From NCBI RefSeq assembly GCF_006345805.1, contig NC_043014.1:27156001-27220000 (forward strand): a stretch of 64,000 nt of DNA, written 5' to 3'. The position numbers and the translations under genes were made by a program. The notes under the pieces were generated by a model that did no database searches, had not been told where the DNA came from, and saw only the letters and a list, made by a program, of their open reading frames with translations. This document shows positions 58,501-62,907 of this stretch, piece after piece (the stretch's first letter is position 1; the number at the start of each line of letters is the position of its first letter). Origin of the DNA: Octopus sinensis. Lineage: Eukaryota.

Positions 58501-61500
58501 TTCACTTACATGTGTCTAAATCCTAACAAAGATCATACAAAGTTGATAGGGCTATTAATTAACCCCCAATGGATAGTGAAGGTTAAAAAACAAACAATGG
58601 AAAATAAAGGAATAGCTTTTATTTAGAACTAAATACAATCGTCAATTGTATTGCGTCTCAGTCATGTTTATTTTTACTTGATCACACACACTGGAGATTA
58701 AGTTAAAAAACAAATGACTGGCGCACTTCATACAGTAAGTTTTAAAATATTGCTTTCAATTTAAAAATTTAGGAAAAAAAAAGAAAACTATTGTTTATCT
58801 TTGTTTTCTTAATCATACTTATGTATAACAAAATTATGAATATATATTTTCAAGACGACTAAACATTTGTGTGAATTTTTTAAAGCCTGAAGTTATATTT
58901 TTTAAGTCTACAACACACCTAGATACTATTTGCGACATACTCGTGCACCGTAGTGCAACGTCTCAGTACCACTCAATAGATTTCCTGTTTTGTGATAGAT
59001 TAATTTGGCTCTAATGGTATGATTGCAATGTTGCTGTCCATACCCTATGACCTGCACTAATCGAGAAGTCCAATGATTAAATTCATTCCGTTCTTGATTA
59101 TTTCGTCTATGTTAGGGAGATTAATACCACATTATTCAACGTGCCGCTTTTTTTAAGGACGAAAGCGTGTGCTTTGAGGGAAATTTGATTGCAATTTTCT
59201 CCAAATTGGTATTTATAAAATTTCACCATTAGTTGAAAAGAAAGTCTTGAAATAAAATTGAATCAACAAGAACAATTGCAGTATTGTGATTTTCCCCCCT
59301 CAAACGTTGTGCTTCATTCAGAAGGCCATGCTTATTTCTTCACAAGGCTATGCTTACTTCTTCACAAGGCCACAGTTTCCCCATCTCTGGACTACTTCGT
59401 GGATATAGTTTATAAGTTAAATAGTCAAACCTATAAGACAGGAGACAACAAACACATAGGTTTGGATTCAAACATTTCGGTGTGAATTTATGCGATTAAG
59501 ACAAATTATTCATCAATCTGGAAGTCGGGAATATGTACTACATCTGAAAATATCACCTATAATAGACCTGTGCCTTATACAGGTGCTTGATAGTGAATTT
59601 CTAATCTGTTTAACACTTTGAACTACTACGTAAATACAGGAAATGCAGTATACTTACTTATAGGTAGACAAAAGTTCACGCTTCGCATCGATGCTGTGGT
59701 GAGGAAAGGAATGTGGATTGACGTAAGTTCTGCTGCAAAATTTCAACCAATCAGTATATAGCGGGATCCCGTGGCCACGACTACGTTGGAGCATAATGGC
59801 CACTAAGTCTCGTGGATATCCTGGTAAGACTTCCACATATTTGTTGGTGAACGACGTAGCTATATACCTAGTTTAGATGATAAAAAAAACGCACATATAT
59901 TAATGCGGGGTGTAAAGAGAACAGGTGATTTAATTACAATTTTTATTGCTATTTTTCATCACCAAGTGTACATGTGTGTGTGTACACACATAATATATAT
60001 ATATATATATATATATATATATACATACATATATATATATATATATATATATATATATATATATACATATATATATATACATATATATATATATATATAC
60101 ATATATATATATATATATATATATTATATATATAATATACATACATATATATATATATACATACATATATATATATATATACATATATATATATATATAC
60201 ATATATATATATATACATACATATATATATATATACATATATATATATATACATACATATATATATATACATATATATATATACATACATAATATATATA
60301 TATACATATATATATATATATATATATCATATATATATATATACATACATATATAATATATACATACATATATTTATATATATACATACATATATATATA
60401 TATATATATAATATATATATATACATATATATATACATATATATATATATATATATATATATATATATAGACCGGAGTAACACATAAATGTGAAACAAGG
60501 TGGAAAAAAGAGTACTCAAATACCAGTGGTAGAGTAATATGCTTTATTTTAAGCAGCAGAAAATTCAACAAAATCTGTTACTCTGAGTTTCTCGTTGCCG
60601 TTCATCAGACAGTTTTTGCTAGCAAAAACTGTCTGATGAACGGCAACGAGAAACTCAGAGTAACAGATTTTGTTGAATTTTCTGCTGCTTAAAATAAAGT
60701 ATATATATATATATATATATATATATATATAGTGAAAGAAAGATAGAGAGAGAGAGAGAGACAATTGTGTGTGTGTGTGTGAAGGCGTGTAAGCCCAGTG
60801 ATTAGAGTTTTGCATTCACGATCGCTAGATCGTGGGTTCGATTCTCAGACCCGCCAGTGAATGTTGGCCTTAGAATATCTCAGAAGTTGAAAAAAATCAT
60901 AAGCGTCAATGATAACCATCAAGGTTTACTCCGAAGGGAATGCAATAAAATTAAAAGACGATACAGTAATAAACATGAAACTACGTGATTGAAAAAGGAC
61001 AACACCACAATATGTAAAAACAGTCAAATTATTATATTCGTGACAATGCGTAAAGACGAATTATGTTGCAGAAATTAGTAATCAATTAACAACGCAATCA
61101 AATTGATGCGGATTCGAAAGATAATGCTACCCAACTAAAAGTTAAACTGACTAAATTAATTACAGTGATAAACGAACAAACAAGAAACATCCATCCCCTT
61201 AATACCATGCGTGGAAGAGGTATTCAGCCTAGCACGTATATATCCGGAACTTCACCCATAATATTTGAAAACAATACACTAACTCAGAATCGCTAAGTAA
61301 TTAGACAGCAATACATCGAATTATATAGATATATATACCGTAGAAATATAGCATAATCTTAAAAAGTATTCCCAAAGACCCTGGAAGAAACCAACAAAGT
61401 AGGCAACATTTCCATCTTTAGACGCAGAAAATCTGTTTAAATGTGTTTCAGTTGCAGAAAATGACCGAAATCATATTAAATAATCCTTTCTAACTTGGGC

Positions 61501-62907
61501 ACAAAGCTTGAAATTTTGGTGGGCATGGAATCTAGTCGATTACATCGAGCCCTCAGCGCTCAAATGGTATTTCTTTGACCGACCCCGAAAGGATGAACGG
61601 CGGAATTTGAACTCAGAACGCAAAGACAGCAGAGATGCCGCTAAGCATTTTGCGTCGTAGTAACGTTTCTGCCAGTTCGCCGCCTTAATTTTATTAAATA
61701 ACGATATAAACACATACAAATAAGCTGCCTATGATACCACTTAAAATATTGGTTTCAAATTTGGAACAAGGCCAGTAATTTTCGGGGAGGGGTTCAAGTT
61801 GATTACATCGAACCCAGTGCTGAAATAGGGATGAAACTGCAAAGTCGACCTCGCCGAAATTTGAACTCAGGACGTAAAGACGGACGGAATATCGCTAAGC
61901 ATTTTGCGCGGCGTGATAACGGCTCTGCCAGCTCGCTGCCTTAATTCTAGCTAAAATGTCAAAATGTAGTCCACACGGTAAATTGTATTTAAAAAATGCG
62001 AGTGGCTGTTTCATGCTTAAAAGCTACATTTATAGCATTTTTGTCGTTACACTACGAAACAATGTGGTACCGAGACATAAACATAAGATGCACACTAGAT
62101 GCTACCGCGTGATAATGGGTCTGTGTATGTAATGTATGCAGGTATATAAAGTATGTAATGTATATATGCATACAGAACAATTTCCATTTTCATTTTTCCA
62201 ATAAAATATAGTACTAGCCAAATATTAGGGGACAGTCTAATCGATTGATTCTAAACGATTAATTCTTCCTTCGAACTTGTGGCTTTACATATAAGTAAGA
62301 AATCATTATTATGAACCATGGCCAATCACCAGCTCAATGATGTTATCGCAGAAAGAAAAAGCTTGACAGAACGTTTGTGAAGTTAAGATAAATAATAAAT
62401 GAGATGATAATTACTGATCAAAACGTTGAGCATGGTCGGTAAGCAAGCCTTTTGTAATAGGTGTAACGGCATCAACATTTTTATAAAACACATCTGGATT
62501 ATAGAAACTCATTGGTTTCGTTTCGGCGTTGAACGTGTATGTGTCTCGAAACATCGTAGTAGCGGTCATTGTCATGATCATGCCGAAAATATTACTGGCT
62601 GAAGCGCTCATTCCGGGGTTATAATTGTTTGTGTAACCGGAAGCTTGCACGTTCAGTTGGTTAGCAGCCATCACAGTCGGTCCCAAAATCAAAGGCAAGT
62701 ATTCATTGTATGTGATGTGTTGAATTTCAGCGATGACCATTTTACGTGTTTCTTGAAAGATCTTTTCGTCGTTCCAGGCGAGGTTGGCAATTTTCAATTC
62801 CTTGGCGAGGTTGGCATTTTTAAATTCCTTGGCGAGTCGGTTGTGTTCACGAACGAATAACATGTTGAGAGCTGTGGCTAACGGTTGTTCATTTATTCTC
62901 TTATCAC
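51939..62907 (-). CDS. Animal heme peroxidase (peroxidase-cyclooxygenase superfamily)-like protein, 3' part, with Thr/Pro stalk and TSP1-like module: complement(join(51939..52530,54260..54362,57559..57725,59658..59867,62415..62907)); 5' exons lie beyond the window
   Basis: Five exons with compatible phases (2,2,1,2) carry the ordered motifs [28 protein letters not shown]...[38 protein letters not shown]...[29 protein letters not shown]...LAHIICRN and NPAVSC. Confidence 0.92.
52222..52490 (-). repeat. Coding VNTR: 18-bp (TTTTTP) and 12-bp (TTTP) units, about 15 units
   Basis: + strand units ggtaggtgttgtagttgt / ggtaggtgttgt / agtcggtgttgt; all unit lengths are multiples of 3. Confidence 0.9.
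53089..53760 (+). mobile_element. Internally deleted mariner-type transposon
   Basis: ta|cgaggcgcattcca ... tggaatgcatcttg|ta; remnants [14 protein letters not shown] and [15 protein letters not shown]. Confidence 0.78.
54260..54362 (-). CDS. Peroxidase-like exon ([35 protein letters not shown]); not in the ORF track
   Basis: (tta)n-ttgcag acceptor, GCATC|gtaagt donor, 103 nt; matches the family QL..IR...LA.I.C.N..I..IQ...F motif. Confidence 0.88.
54429..55144 (+). mobile_element. R4/Dong-like non-LTR retrotransposon 3' end, second family, inserted in (AAT)n
   Basis: [22 protein letters not shown]...KLSKYKDL...PIVIGAL...[14 protein letters not shown]; (AAT)n on both sides. Confidence 0.85.
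55761..56751. repeat. 456-bp direct duplication (55761-56216 and 56296-56751) with a 79-bp spacer
   Basis: The copies match apart from one substitution I noticed (gaatagat / gaattgat). Confidence 0.88.
56944..57133. repeat. Fold-back hairpin, 75-bp arms (one mismatch) and 40-nt loop
   Basis: ataatagttatcgccatac...ttagctccatga versus tcatggagctaa...gtatgacgataactattat. Confidence 0.92.
57559..57725 (-). CDS. Peroxidase-like exon ([10 protein letters not shown]...GQLTQ)
   Basis: ctttgacttccag acceptor, CAGC|gtacgt donor, 167 nt; GDRFWYEN motif. Confidence 0.92.
59658..59867 (-). CDS. Peroxidase-like exon ([10 protein letters not shown]...LLSTYK)
   Basis: atctaaactag acceptor, TATAA|gtaagt donor, 210 nt; QRSRGHG motif. 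Confidence 0.9.
60542..60699. repeat. Perfect 158-bp palindrome with no spacer (centre ..tttttgct|agcaaaaa..)
   Basis: Arms compared base by base; symmetry axis between 60620 and 60621. Confidence 0.95.
60623..60672 (+). ncRNA. Hammerhead ribozyme candidate in the palindrome arm (mirror copy on the - strand at ~60569-60618)
   Basis: caaaa-a-cugu CUGAUGA a-CG-GCAA-CG-a GAAA CUCAGAG UA/acag-a-uuuug: core intact, GUA triplet, helix I 4+5 bp; helix II lacks the canonical R-Y closing pair. Confidence 0.55.
62415..62907 (-). CDS. Peroxidase-like exon (GDKRINEQP...HAQRFD)
   Basis: tattacaacag acceptor, GATCA|gtaat donor, 493 nt; ORF 62411..62863. Confidence 0.92.

What the first reader, a model, noticed from the sequence alone, without database searches (positions are those of the whole stretch)
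59780..62600. Heme-peroxidase homolog that has lost the proximal heme-ligand His and its support residues: candidate pseudo-peroxidase
Seen in the sequence: the frame and splice sites are intact, yet the helix that normally reads N.F...AFRFGHS (MPO Arg333/His336) reads [14 protein letters not shown]. There is no His at all between QHITY and TDHAQ (Thr codon 62558-62560 sits at the expected His position). Independently, in the next exon DL.ALN.QR.RDHG reads [14 protein letters not shown], so the Asn that hydrogen-bonds the proximal His (MPO Asn421) is Met (59792-59794). The distal-side Arg and heme-ester Glu (GDKRINEQ) are kept. Established: His336 is the iron ligand of this superfamily, and heme-less peroxidase domains exist (e.g. 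Duox). Inference: coordinated loss across two exons with no stops or frameshifts points to a maintained, non-catalytic or differently liganded protein rather than a decayed pseudogene.
Basis: partly seen in the sequence, partly recalled or inferred. Interest (0 to 1): 0.8.

Follow-up and report, generated by a model that had tools for sequence, protein, structure and literature searches.

The report
Cephalopod peroxidase homolog without heme ligand
The window holds the intact 3' half of a cephalopod gene for a secreted-type, peroxidase-shaped protein that has lost the histidine that normally holds the heme iron; it belongs to a small group of octopus-type paralogs that share this loss and have stayed under selection, so it is most likely a non-enzymatic descendant of the ink-gland peroxidase family, not a dead gene.

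Summary
On the minus strand, five exons (62907-62415, 59867-59658, 57725-57559, 54362-54260, 52530-51939) have canonical AG/GT sites and join in frame. They give 520 codons: animal haem peroxidase domain (Pfam positions 213-498), a Thr/Pro mucin-like repeat, a weak TSP1-like Cys module and a tail. The proximal His is Thr (62558-62560), its partner Asn is Met (59792-59794), the propionate-binding Arg is Met, and RDHG reads RGHG. The distal Arg and Glu are kept. The 5' exons with the distal His lie outside the window.

The loss is not private to this gene. A well-supported cephalopod clade splits into a His-keeping group (Sepia melanogenic peroxidase, Euprymna light-organ peroxidase, octopus ink peroxidase) and a His-less group of six. 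That group holds the window gene, Octopus bimaculoides/sinensis/vulgaris "chorion peroxidase-like" proteins and Logan transcripts.

The His-less genes look maintained: ORFs are intact, one paralog is transcribed, and nonsynonymous divergence lies far below saturated synonymous divergence. An AlphaFold model of the closest paralog keeps the MPO fold. No ortholog, transcript or activity data exist for this gene itself.

Verdict: a new member of a known kind (pseudo-peroxidases such as DUOX and PXDNL). Interest is moderate.

The parts
62415..62907 (-). Exon A (493 nt). It spans the GDKRINEQ distal Arg/Glu motif through the degenerate proximal helix to ...TDHAQRFDQ, and matches Pfam An_peroxidase positions 213-372.
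   Evidence: acceptor ...acag| and donor |gtaatt; the same exon borders occur in P0145 (genomic ORF) and in P0005/P0298
62558..62560 (-). Thr codon (ACT) at the proximal-His (MPO His336) column
62567..62569 (-). Met codon at the Arg333 column. Arg333 is the heme-propionate partner in MPO (established knowledge).
62888..62899 (-). R-I-N-E: the retained distal Arg239 and heme-ester Glu242 equivalents
62777..62836 (-). 27-bp in-frame tandem duplication ([18 protein letters not shown]) in a surface helix; absent from all relatives
59658..59867 (-). Exon B (210 nt) with [14 protein letters not shown], the degenerate Asn421/RDHG motif
59792..59794 (-). Met codon at the Asn421 column (H-bond partner of the proximal His)
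57559..57725 (-). Exon C (167 nt), with a conserved ...VGPT.ACI....[11 protein letters not shown] core
54260..54362 (-). Exon D (103 nt), [33 protein letters not shown]
51939..52530 (-). Last exon E: [13 protein letters not shown], the Thr/Pro repeat, the TSP1-like Cys module, a helical tail, and stop TGA at 51941-51939
52221..52490 (-). 90-codon Thr/Pro (mucin-like) repeat built from 12/18-bp units. It is a lineage-specific insertion between the peroxidase-like domain and the Cys module. It contains no GT donor, so it must be coding.
52083..52220 (-). TSP1-like Cys module (VCDGWG...[22 protein letters not shown]), shared with all cephalopod clade members
   Evidence: Pfam TSP_1 only E=0.06, below its cutoff

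Best explanation
The window carries the 3' half of a real cephalopod (octopod-like) protein-coding gene. The gene belongs to a lineage-specific subfamily of animal-haem-peroxidase homologs that arose by duplication from the ink-gland/light-organ peroxidase lineage.

In the ancestor of this subfamily the proximal side of the heme pocket was dismantled. The iron-ligand His, its Asn H-bond partner and (in this branch) the propionate-binding Arg were replaced, here by Thr and Met residues.

Shown: the rest of the peroxidase scaffold (disulfide cysteines, the GDRFWYE core, most ultra-conserved positions) and the C-terminal Cys module have been kept under purifying selection.

Inferred: the protein cannot hold heme iron in the canonical way and is not a halide/H2O2 peroxidase. 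It acts instead as a secreted, glycosylated binding or structural protein that uses the peroxidase fold as a scaffold, in the way peroxinectin-type adhesion, the DUOX peroxidase-homology domain and PXDNL do. In this gene the scaffold is extended by an O-glycosylatable Thr/Pro mucin-like linker, which points to a mucus, matrix or egg-coat setting.
For: - Gene integrity: five exons with canonical splice sites and 520 codons without a stop. Intron positions are shared with P0005, P0298 and P0145.
- Family: Pfam An_peroxidase E=7e-37, 1e-7 and 2e-16 for the three domain exons; MPO/LPO are the best PDB hits at E=1e-41.
- Lost residues: H336T, N421M, R333M and D427G by four alignment methods.
- Clade: an 11-row cephalopod clade (SH-aLRT 99) contains a His-less group of 6 (support 90): window+P0002+P0145 (98) and P0008+P0005+P0150 (94). 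It is sister to the His-keeping P0013 and Sepia/Euprymna/Argonauta/O. vulgaris group. His loss needs only one change in this clade.
- Long-term selection after the loss: window vs P0002 pN 0.38 vs pS 0.79 over 414 codons; P0002 vs P0145 pN 0.19 vs pS 0.71.
- Recent selection in a paralog: P0005 vs P0298 omega 0.61, with a synonymous excess at p=0.01.
- ORF survival: an open frame of this length survives only about 0.05 neutral substitutions per site with P=0.08, and 0.1 per site with P=0.008.
- Targeted change: 55 of 71 ultra-conserved columns are kept, and 10 of the 16 changes sit in the proximal-heme segments.
- Expression of a His-less paralog: intron-less transcripts appear in SRR27666079, SRR27666065 and SRR27666080.
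- Fold: the AF2 model of P0002 has pLDDT 89.8 and pTM 0.88 with the proximal helix still helical; Foldseek TM 0.84-0.88 to MPO/LPO.
- Precedent: DUOX lacks the proximal His and peroxidase activity (PMC4420034). The PXDNL group has other residues at the His336/Asn421 positions and lacks activity (PMC3533774, PMC8533639).
Against: - No ortholog above 53% identity was found for this gene among 1.84 billion representatives or by word-based searches. There is therefore no gene-specific dN/dS and no transcript.
- The window gene has the longest terminal branch in its clade (0.82 vs a median of 0.35).
- It carries a recent 27-bp duplication and a repeat expansion, which would also fit relaxed constraint.
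- Omega of 0.61 in the P0005 lineage is only weak constraint.
- The 5' half, including the start codon, signal peptide and distal His, is outside the window, so a disabling lesion there cannot be excluded.
- Loss of heme binding and of activity is inferred, not measured. The distal Arg and Glu are retained, and two paralog lineages keep the distal His.
- The proposed binding or structural role has no direct support.
Confidence: 0.62

Rival explanations
1. The protein is still a cofactor-binding redox enzyme with a rebuilt proximal site. It would bind heme non-covalently or through another ligand: a thioether from one of the Met residues now clustered in the proximal helix and at the Asn421 position, or the distal His. 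Alternatively it binds a different metal or cofactor. Either way it would catalyse a modified reaction.
For: - The distal Arg239 and Glu242 equivalents are kept.
- The P0002 and P0283 paralogs keep the distal His.
- In the window, Met sits at four positions of the proximal helix and at the Asn421 column. A112M and R114M (window-fragment positions; R114 = the MPO Arg333 column) are shared with P0002.
- The pocket-forming fold is intact in the model of P0002.
Against: - The residue at the His column is not conserved within the His-less clade (T, A, T, A, A, T). Neither is the Asn421 column (M, I, H, Y). That pattern argues against a new defined ligand.
- The P0005 lineage has also lost the distal His (GEFLMRD).
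- Gln91 and Asp94 are lost in all full-length members.
- Overall Met content is ordinary, 3.0% vs a 2.4% median.
- No Met-ligated member of this superfamily is known to me.
Confidence: 0.12
2. This particular copy is a recently inactivated or never-expressed duplicate (a young pseudogene) of a functional His-less paralog. Its frame is still open only because too little time has passed.
For: - No identical or orthologous protein or transcript exists in very large collections that do contain its paralogs.
- It has the longest terminal branch in its clade.
- It carries a 27-bp duplication and a Thr/Pro repeat expansion.
- Its introns and surroundings are saturated with transposons and microsatellites.
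- The 5' half is unseen.
Against: - All 520 codons and all splice signals are intact. Even 0.05 neutral substitutions per site would leave the frame open only 8% of the time.
- 55 of 71 ultra-conserved scaffold positions and all four conserved cysteines of the domain part are retained.
- Both indels are in frame.
- Even the genomic exon ORF is absent from the collections. This suggests the source species is simply unsampled, so the missing transcript carries no weight.
Confidence: 0.18
3. It is an ordinary active peroxidase, and the apparent loss is an alignment or gene-model artefact, with the real His supplied from elsewhere in the sequence.
For: Alignment of the helix to human MPO is ambiguous by one register.
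Against: - There is no His, Cys or Tyr anywhere in the 100 residues between QHITY and TDHAQ.
- Both registers give a non-ligand residue.
- The exon is one uninterrupted ORF with the same borders as in relatives.
- Five relatives show the same loss.
Confidence: 0.02

Closest known systems
Octopus 'chorion peroxidase(-like)' proteins: O. bimaculoides P0005 (780 aa), O. sinensis XP_029647729.2, O. vulgaris CAI9737911.1. Also the unnamed Logan transcripts P0002/P0280 (769 aa) and P0283 (807 aa).
   Same: They fall in the same His-less clade. They share the exon structure, the loss of His336 and Asn421, the C-terminal TSP1-like Cys module and a similar helical tail.
   Different: They are only 45-48% identical, so they are paralogs or very distant orthologs. 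They lack the Thr/Pro repeat and the 9-residue duplication. Database names imply an active chorion peroxidase, which the sequences do not support. The P0005 lineage has also lost the distal His.
Sepia officinalis melanogenic (ink-gland) peroxidase O18504, Euprymna scolopes light-organ peroxidase-like protein Q24926, and O. vulgaris 'peroxidase' CAI9737761.1
   Same: These form the sister group inside the same cephalopod clade. They share the C-terminal Cys module and about 44% identity. They already show erosion of the proximal network: the Arg333 column is Ile, and the Asn421 column is Asp or Lys in three of the four sequences examined (O. vulgaris P0168 keeps Asn).
   Different: They keep both the distal and proximal His. 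They are linked to measured peroxidase activity in ink gland, light organ and ink (PMC4052311, PMC6386654, PMC10142993). The window gene has Thr at the ligand position.
DUOX peroxidase-homology domain
   Same: It has the animal-haem-peroxidase fold, lacks the proximal His and lacks peroxidase activity, yet is retained as a structural or regulatory module (PMC4420034). DUOX1 structures appear among the sequence and fold hits.
   Different: It is a different, ancient family (family 7), fused to an NADPH oxidase. It is far more distant in sequence (E=1e-12 vs 1e-41 for MPO). Its loss was independent.
Vertebrate peroxidasin-like protein (PXDNL, group Pxd2)
   Same: It is a secreted multidomain peroxidase homolog with substitutions at the His336/Asn421 positions and no peroxidase activity (PMC3533774, PMC8533639).
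   Different: It has a different domain set (LRR, Ig, vWFC) and sits in a different clade. Its loss was independent.
Invertebrate peroxinectins
   Same: They are secreted peroxidase-fold proteins whose adhesion function is carried by the scaffold (PMC4420034, PMC3533774). This is a functional analogy for a non-catalytic role.
   Different: Peroxinectins keep the heme residues and activity and have an integrin-binding motif. No KGD/RGD motif is visible in the window part (GDK at the exon start is the conserved GD.R motif).

Membership tests
Animal haem peroxidase domain (Pfam PF03098; peroxidase-cyclooxygenase superfamily) | Significant match to the family profile or fold | tested here: met
   E=6.6e-37, 1.4e-7 and 1.5e-16 for exons A-C, all above the 25-bit cutoff. 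MPO/LPO hits at E=1e-41. The closest paralog models as an MPO fold with TM 0.86-0.88.
Catalytically competent animal haem peroxidase | Proximal His (MPO His336) as iron ligand | tested here: not met
   Thr at 62558-62560. No His, Cys or Tyr lies in the helix.
Catalytically competent animal haem peroxidase | Asn421 H-bonded to the proximal His, Arg333 to a heme propionate, and the RDHG motif | tested here: not met
   Asn is Met (59792-59794), Arg333 is Met, and RDHG reads RGHG. Arg424 is kept.
Catalytically competent animal haem peroxidase | Distal Arg239 and Glu242 (ester link) | tested here: met
   GDKRINEQ at 62885-62907
Catalytically competent animal haem peroxidase | Distal Gln91, Asp94, His95 and the Ca2+ site | not testable with these tools
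   These are encoded by exons upstream of base 64000. In paralogs Gln91 and Asp94 are lost, and His95 is kept (P0002, P0283) or lost (P0005 lineage).
Catalytically competent animal haem peroxidase | Bound heme and H2O2-dependent activity | not testable with these tools
   This needs the protein, spectroscopy and an assay.
Cephalopod His-less peroxidase-like subfamily (defined here) | Falls in the clade with P0002, P0145, P0008 and P0005/P0150, and shares the loss of His336 and Asn421 | tested here: met
   SH-aLRT is 98 for window+P0002+P0145, 90 for the six and 99 for the cephalopod clade. One change of state is needed.
Cephalopod His-less peroxidase-like subfamily (defined here) | C-terminal Cys module (TSP1-like) after the peroxidase domain | tested here: met
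   tblastn and alignment to P0002 and P0008. The Pfam TSP_1 match is sub-threshold only (E=0.06).
Maintained pseudoenzyme (as opposed to pseudogene) | Intact reading frame and splice signals | tested here: met
   Met for the 5 exons in the window. The 5' exons are unseen.
Maintained pseudoenzyme (as opposed to pseudogene) | Purifying selection after loss of the catalytic residue | tested here: inconclusive
   Selection is clear at the subfamily level (pN 0.38 vs pS 0.79; pN 0.19 vs pS 0.71) and weak in the P0005 lineage (omega 0.61). No ortholog pair exists for this gene itself.
Maintained pseudoenzyme (as opposed to pseudogene) | Expression | not tested
   No transcript of this gene is in the collections. 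Paralog P0002/P0280 is transcribed.

The most novel reading that the evidence does not exclude
The His-less cephalopod subfamily is not cofactor-free. It would have switched chemistry, with the Met-rich rebuilt proximal helix ([13 protein letters not shown], plus Met at the Asn421 position) giving a thioether-ligated heme or a soft-metal (for example Cu(I)) site inside a peroxidase fold. That would be a new type of redox centre in the peroxidase-cyclooxygenase superfamily, possibly tied to cephalopod-specific biology such as ink, mucus or egg-coat chemistry.
Probability: 0.06. Interest if true: 0.75.

Novelty: new member of a known kind. Interest (0 to 1): 0.4.

Why it matters
Peroxidase-fold proteins that have given up heme catalysis are known from DUOX and PXDNL. 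What their scaffolds do is still obscure.

This finding adds an independent, lineage-specific case. A whole group of octopus-type paralogs sits next to the well-studied ink-gland and light-organ peroxidases, lost the iron ligand once, and was kept afterwards.

Two practical consequences follow:
- Automatic names such as 'chorion peroxidase' for these genes, and functional inferences drawn from them in octopus transcriptome or proteome studies, are probably wrong.
- The active and inactive sister groups offer a natural comparison for asking which non-catalytic functions the fold supports.

The mucin-like insertion in this copy suggests a secreted matrix or mucus role that could be tested.

Tried and rejected
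- **Identical or orthologous proteins.** I ran a padded-length word search, an exon-only search and an exhaustive phmmer run over 1.84 billion representatives. Nothing exceeded 53% identity, so gene-specific dN/dS and expression could not be obtained.
- **Spliced protein as a query.** Exon A alone was used instead. For the same reason the window protein itself was not folded, and the closest full-length paralog P0002 was modelled.
- **Species identification.** The neighbouring reverse-transcriptase ORF gave only unnamed hits at up to 88% identity. The only hints of an octopod origin are SINE-like repeats shared with an O. bimaculoides locus at 67-87% and the protein tree.
- **Tandem-cluster test.** The O. 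bimaculoides P0005 locus has unrelated neighbours and does not overlap the window.
- **O. maya oviducal-gland link.** The qPCR primers for the 'chorion peroxidase' of PMC8976471 do not match the window or any fetched locus with up to 4 mismatches.
- **Weis et al. 1996.** PMC19390 is not held in the library.
- **Met enrichment as a cofactor signal.** Overall Met content is ordinary; only the local clustering stands out.
- **Alternative splicing that skips the Thr/Pro repeat.** There is no GT donor inside the repeat, and the only downstream AG gives an immediate stop (by inspection).
- **RNA genes.** Rfam and tRNA scans of the window found nothing.

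
Full report
**What is there**

The window is AT-rich, repeat-laden eukaryotic DNA. On the minus strand between 62907 and 51939 lie five exons that match animal haem peroxidases:
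- A, 62907-62415
- B, 59867-59658
- C, 57725-57559
- D, 54362-54260
- E, 52530-51939

Each exon is bounded by AG and GT(A/R) signals. The phases fit, and the joined 1,563 nt translate into 520 residues ending at TGA 51941-51939. tblastn with cephalopod relatives finds exactly these five pieces and no second copy in the window.

Exons A-C match Pfam An_peroxidase positions 213-498 of 530 (E=7e-37, 1e-7, 2e-16). Human MPO and mammalian LPO are the best solved relatives (E=1e-41). The N-terminal half of the domain, with the distal Gln/Asp/His and the Ca2+ site, must be encoded upstream of base 64000 and is not available.

The last exon continues past the domain. It encodes a 90-codon Thr/Pro repeat (52221-52490; TRF period 18), then a Cys module resembling a thrombospondin type-1 repeat (Pfam TSP_1 only E=0.06), then a short helical tail.

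**Check of the observation**

- The exon-A peptide reads ...[12 protein letters not shown]...[21 protein letters not shown]...[11 protein letters not shown], with no His between QHITY and TDHAQ.
- Four alignments place Thr (ACT, 62560-62558) in the proximal-His column: MAFFT of 18 family members, hmmalign of 277 homologs, BLASTP to the canonical cephalopod paralog P0013 and hhalign to a 76-sequence profile.
- phmmer against human MPO, whose helix is one residue shorter, slides the register and puts Met there. No register supplies His, Cys or Tyr.
- In exon [15 protein letters not shown] has Met (59794-59792) for Asn421 and Gly for the Asp of RDHG.
- The column of Arg333, the heme-propionate partner in MPO (established knowledge), is Met.
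- The distal Arg239 and ester-forming Glu242 are kept in GDKRINEQ.

The pattern is not chance. His occupies its column in 240 of 262 homologs. Of 71 columns conserved at 85% or more in 268 other homologs, the window keeps 55, including the four domain cysteines and the GDRFWYE core. Ten of the 16 departures fall in three short proximal-pocket segments: the His helix, the N.LFE motif and the DL.A.N.QR.RDHG motif. Fisher's test gives p=3e-4, with the caveat that the segments were delimited from the known motifs.

**The loss is older than this gene**

The nearest proteins are all cephalopod and only 44-48% identical. In a maximum-likelihood tree of 51 sequences, an 11-member cephalopod clade (SH-aLRT 99) has two parts.

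One part holds a fully canonical paralog (P0013) plus a His-keeping group. By cluster look-up this group is the Sepia officinalis melanogenic ink-gland peroxidase (O18504), the Euprymna scolopes light-organ peroxidase-like protein (Q24926), an Argonauta protein and O. vulgaris 'peroxidase' CAI9737761.1. The literature ties this group to measured peroxidase activity in ink gland, light organ and ink (PMC4052311, PMC6386654, PMC10142993).

The other part (support 90) is a His-less group of six:
- window + P0002 + P0145 (support 98);
- P0008 together with P0005 (O. bimaculoides 'chorion peroxidase') and P0150 (O. vulgaris). P0150's 90% cluster also holds O. sinensis XP_029647729.2 (P0298), which was not in the tree. 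Support for this trio is 94.

All six have a non-ligand residue (T, A, T, A, A, T) at the His column, and those that cover it have I, H, Y or M at the Asn421 column. On the tree the His state changes once for this clade.

Full-length members show that Gln91 and Asp94 are also gone. The distal His survives in P0002 and P0283 but not in the P0005 lineage (GEFLMRD).

About 8% of all retrieved homologs (21 of the other 261 sequences with a residue there) lack His at this column. Loss of the ligand therefore recurs in invertebrate peroxidase families.

**Dead gene or maintained protein?**

Several lines point to maintenance.
- The 520 codons and nine splice signals are intact. In simulations an ORF of this length stays open with probability 0.08 after 0.05 neutral substitutions per site, and 0.008 after 0.1. 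Yet the gene has accumulated about 0.8 amino-acid replacements per site on its own branch.
- Between the window gene and P0002, both His-less, synonymous sites are saturated (pS 0.79) while nonsynonymous differences are half that (pN 0.38; 414 codons). Between P0002 and the genomic exon P0145 the figures are pS 0.71 and pN 0.19. Constraint thus continued long after the ligand was lost.
- Between O. bimaculoides and O. sinensis orthologs of P0005, omega is 0.61 (dS 0.116, dN 0.071, 627 codons). This is weak but detectable constraint (p=0.01).
- P0002/P0280 are intron-less contigs assembled from three RNA runs, so a His-less paralog is transcribed.
- Root-to-tip lengths of the His-less members (0.8-1.24) are not far above those of the active sister group (0.8-0.9).
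- An AlphaFold2 model of P0002 is confident (pLDDT 89.8, pTM 0.88). The rebuilt proximal segment (432-447) is still a helix (432-445), and the model superposes on MPO/LPO with target-normalised TM 0.84-0.88.

Against this, for the window gene itself there is no ortholog, no transcript and no 5' end. Its branch is the longest in the clade, and it carries a 27-bp in-frame duplication (62777-62836) and a repeat expansion. Even its genomic exon ORF is missing from collections that include raw-read assemblies. The source species therefore seems unsampled, and the missing transcript is uninformative.

**Most likely mechanism**

Shown: the scaffold is conserved, the proximal heme-binding residues are replaced, and the subfamily is under selection.

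Inferred: without the axial His, its Asn partner and one propionate-binding Arg, and (in paralogs) without Gln91 and Asp94, the protein cannot hold and tune heme iron as MPO-type enzymes do. It is therefore not a halide/H2O2 peroxidase.

Relatives start with hydrophobic signal-like N-termini, and all carry the extracellular-type Cys module. In this gene a Thr/Pro stretch typical of O-glycosylated mucin linkers has been inserted between the two. I therefore read it as a secreted glycoprotein that uses the peroxidase fold for binding or structure. This follows the precedent of peroxinectin adhesion, the DUOX peroxidase-homology domain and PXDNL (PMC4420034, PMC3533774, PMC8533639). Tissue and partner are unknown. 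My confidence is about 0.6.

Rival explanations:
- A rebuilt cofactor site, with Met or distal-His ligation (about 0.12). It is weakened by the lack of conservation at the would-be ligand columns within the clade.
- A young pseudogene (about 0.18).
- An alignment artefact (about 0.02), essentially excluded.

**Comparison and novelty**

The gene passes the membership test for the animal-haem-peroxidase fold. It fails the test for a catalytically competent peroxidase on the proximal His, Asn421 and Arg333. The distal triad, heme content and activity could not be tested.

It is a member of a cephalopod His-less subfamily whose other members are annotated automatically as 'chorion peroxidase(-like)'. 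I found no paper noting that these lack the heme ligand, but the library is incomplete.

Pseudo-peroxidases as a kind are known. This is a new member, with a variant architecture (mucin-like linker plus TSP1-like module) and an informative position next to the ink and light-organ enzymes. Interest is moderate at 0.4.

Noticed in passing
window 62777-62836 (-): A 27-bp in-frame tandem duplication (2.2 copies, 93% match) gives [18 protein letters not shown] inside exon A. All 17 aligned relatives have a single copy.
   Followed up: partly
window 52221-52490 (-): A 90-codon Thr/Pro repeat (12/18-bp units) sits inside the last exon, just before the first Cys of the TSP1-like module. It is absent from every paralog. 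It looks like a recently expanded mucin-type linker.
   Followed up: partly
window 62914-62982 and 54367-54428: (TAA/AAT)n microsatellites of 60-70 bp directly abut the acceptor sites of exons A and D. On the coding strand, (ATT)n stands where a polypyrimidine tract would be.
   Followed up: no
window 60537-60704: A near-perfect palindrome (two 84-nt arms, 99% complementary, no spacer) is embedded between long (AT)n/(TATG)n arrays in the intron between exons A and B. A second inverted repeat lies at 56944-57018 / 57059-57133 (75-nt arms, 40-nt spacer) just downstream of exon C. These may be foldback or MITE-like elements.
   Followed up: partly
window 61474-61697, 61745-61945, 47738-47972, 28277-28514 and others: About 220-bp SINE-like repeats are scattered through the window, including two in the A-B intron. 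They are 67-85% identical to copies in the O. bimaculoides locus L002. This is the only DNA-level hint that the source is an octopod.
   Followed up: partly
window 49285-50436 (-), 20486-20956 (+), 9527-10351 (-), 32545-33741 (-): Several transposon remnants are present. An RVT_1 reverse-transcriptase ORF lies about 1.5 kb downstream of the gene's stop. There is a second RVT_1 fragment and a pogo/Tigger-type DDE_1 transposase ORF. An LTR-retrotransposon RNase H/integrase block sits in the GC-richer stretch at 32-40 kb.
   Followed up: partly
window 55518-55971 and 56233-56506: The same ORF pair ([26 protein letters not shown]... on the minus strand, [31 protein letters not shown]... on the plus strand) occurs twice about 700 bp apart in the intron between exons C and D. 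This indicates a local segmental duplication.
   Followed up: no
proteins P0007, P0299, P0009, P0168 (relatives, not in the window): The Sepia, Euprymna and octopus ink/light-organ peroxidases keep both His residues but have Ile at the Arg333 column, Asp or Lys at the Asn421 column in three of the four (O. vulgaris P0168 keeps Asn), Val at Gln91, Asn at Asp94 and Val at Glu242. Their heme environment is therefore already unusual for enzymes reported as active.
   Followed up: partly
proteins P0024, P0112 and about 13 others among the homologs retrieved: Independent losses of the proximal His occur outside cephalopods, in 21 of the other 261 aligned homologs. Several are very long multi-domain proteins. 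Their taxa are unknown.
   Followed up: no
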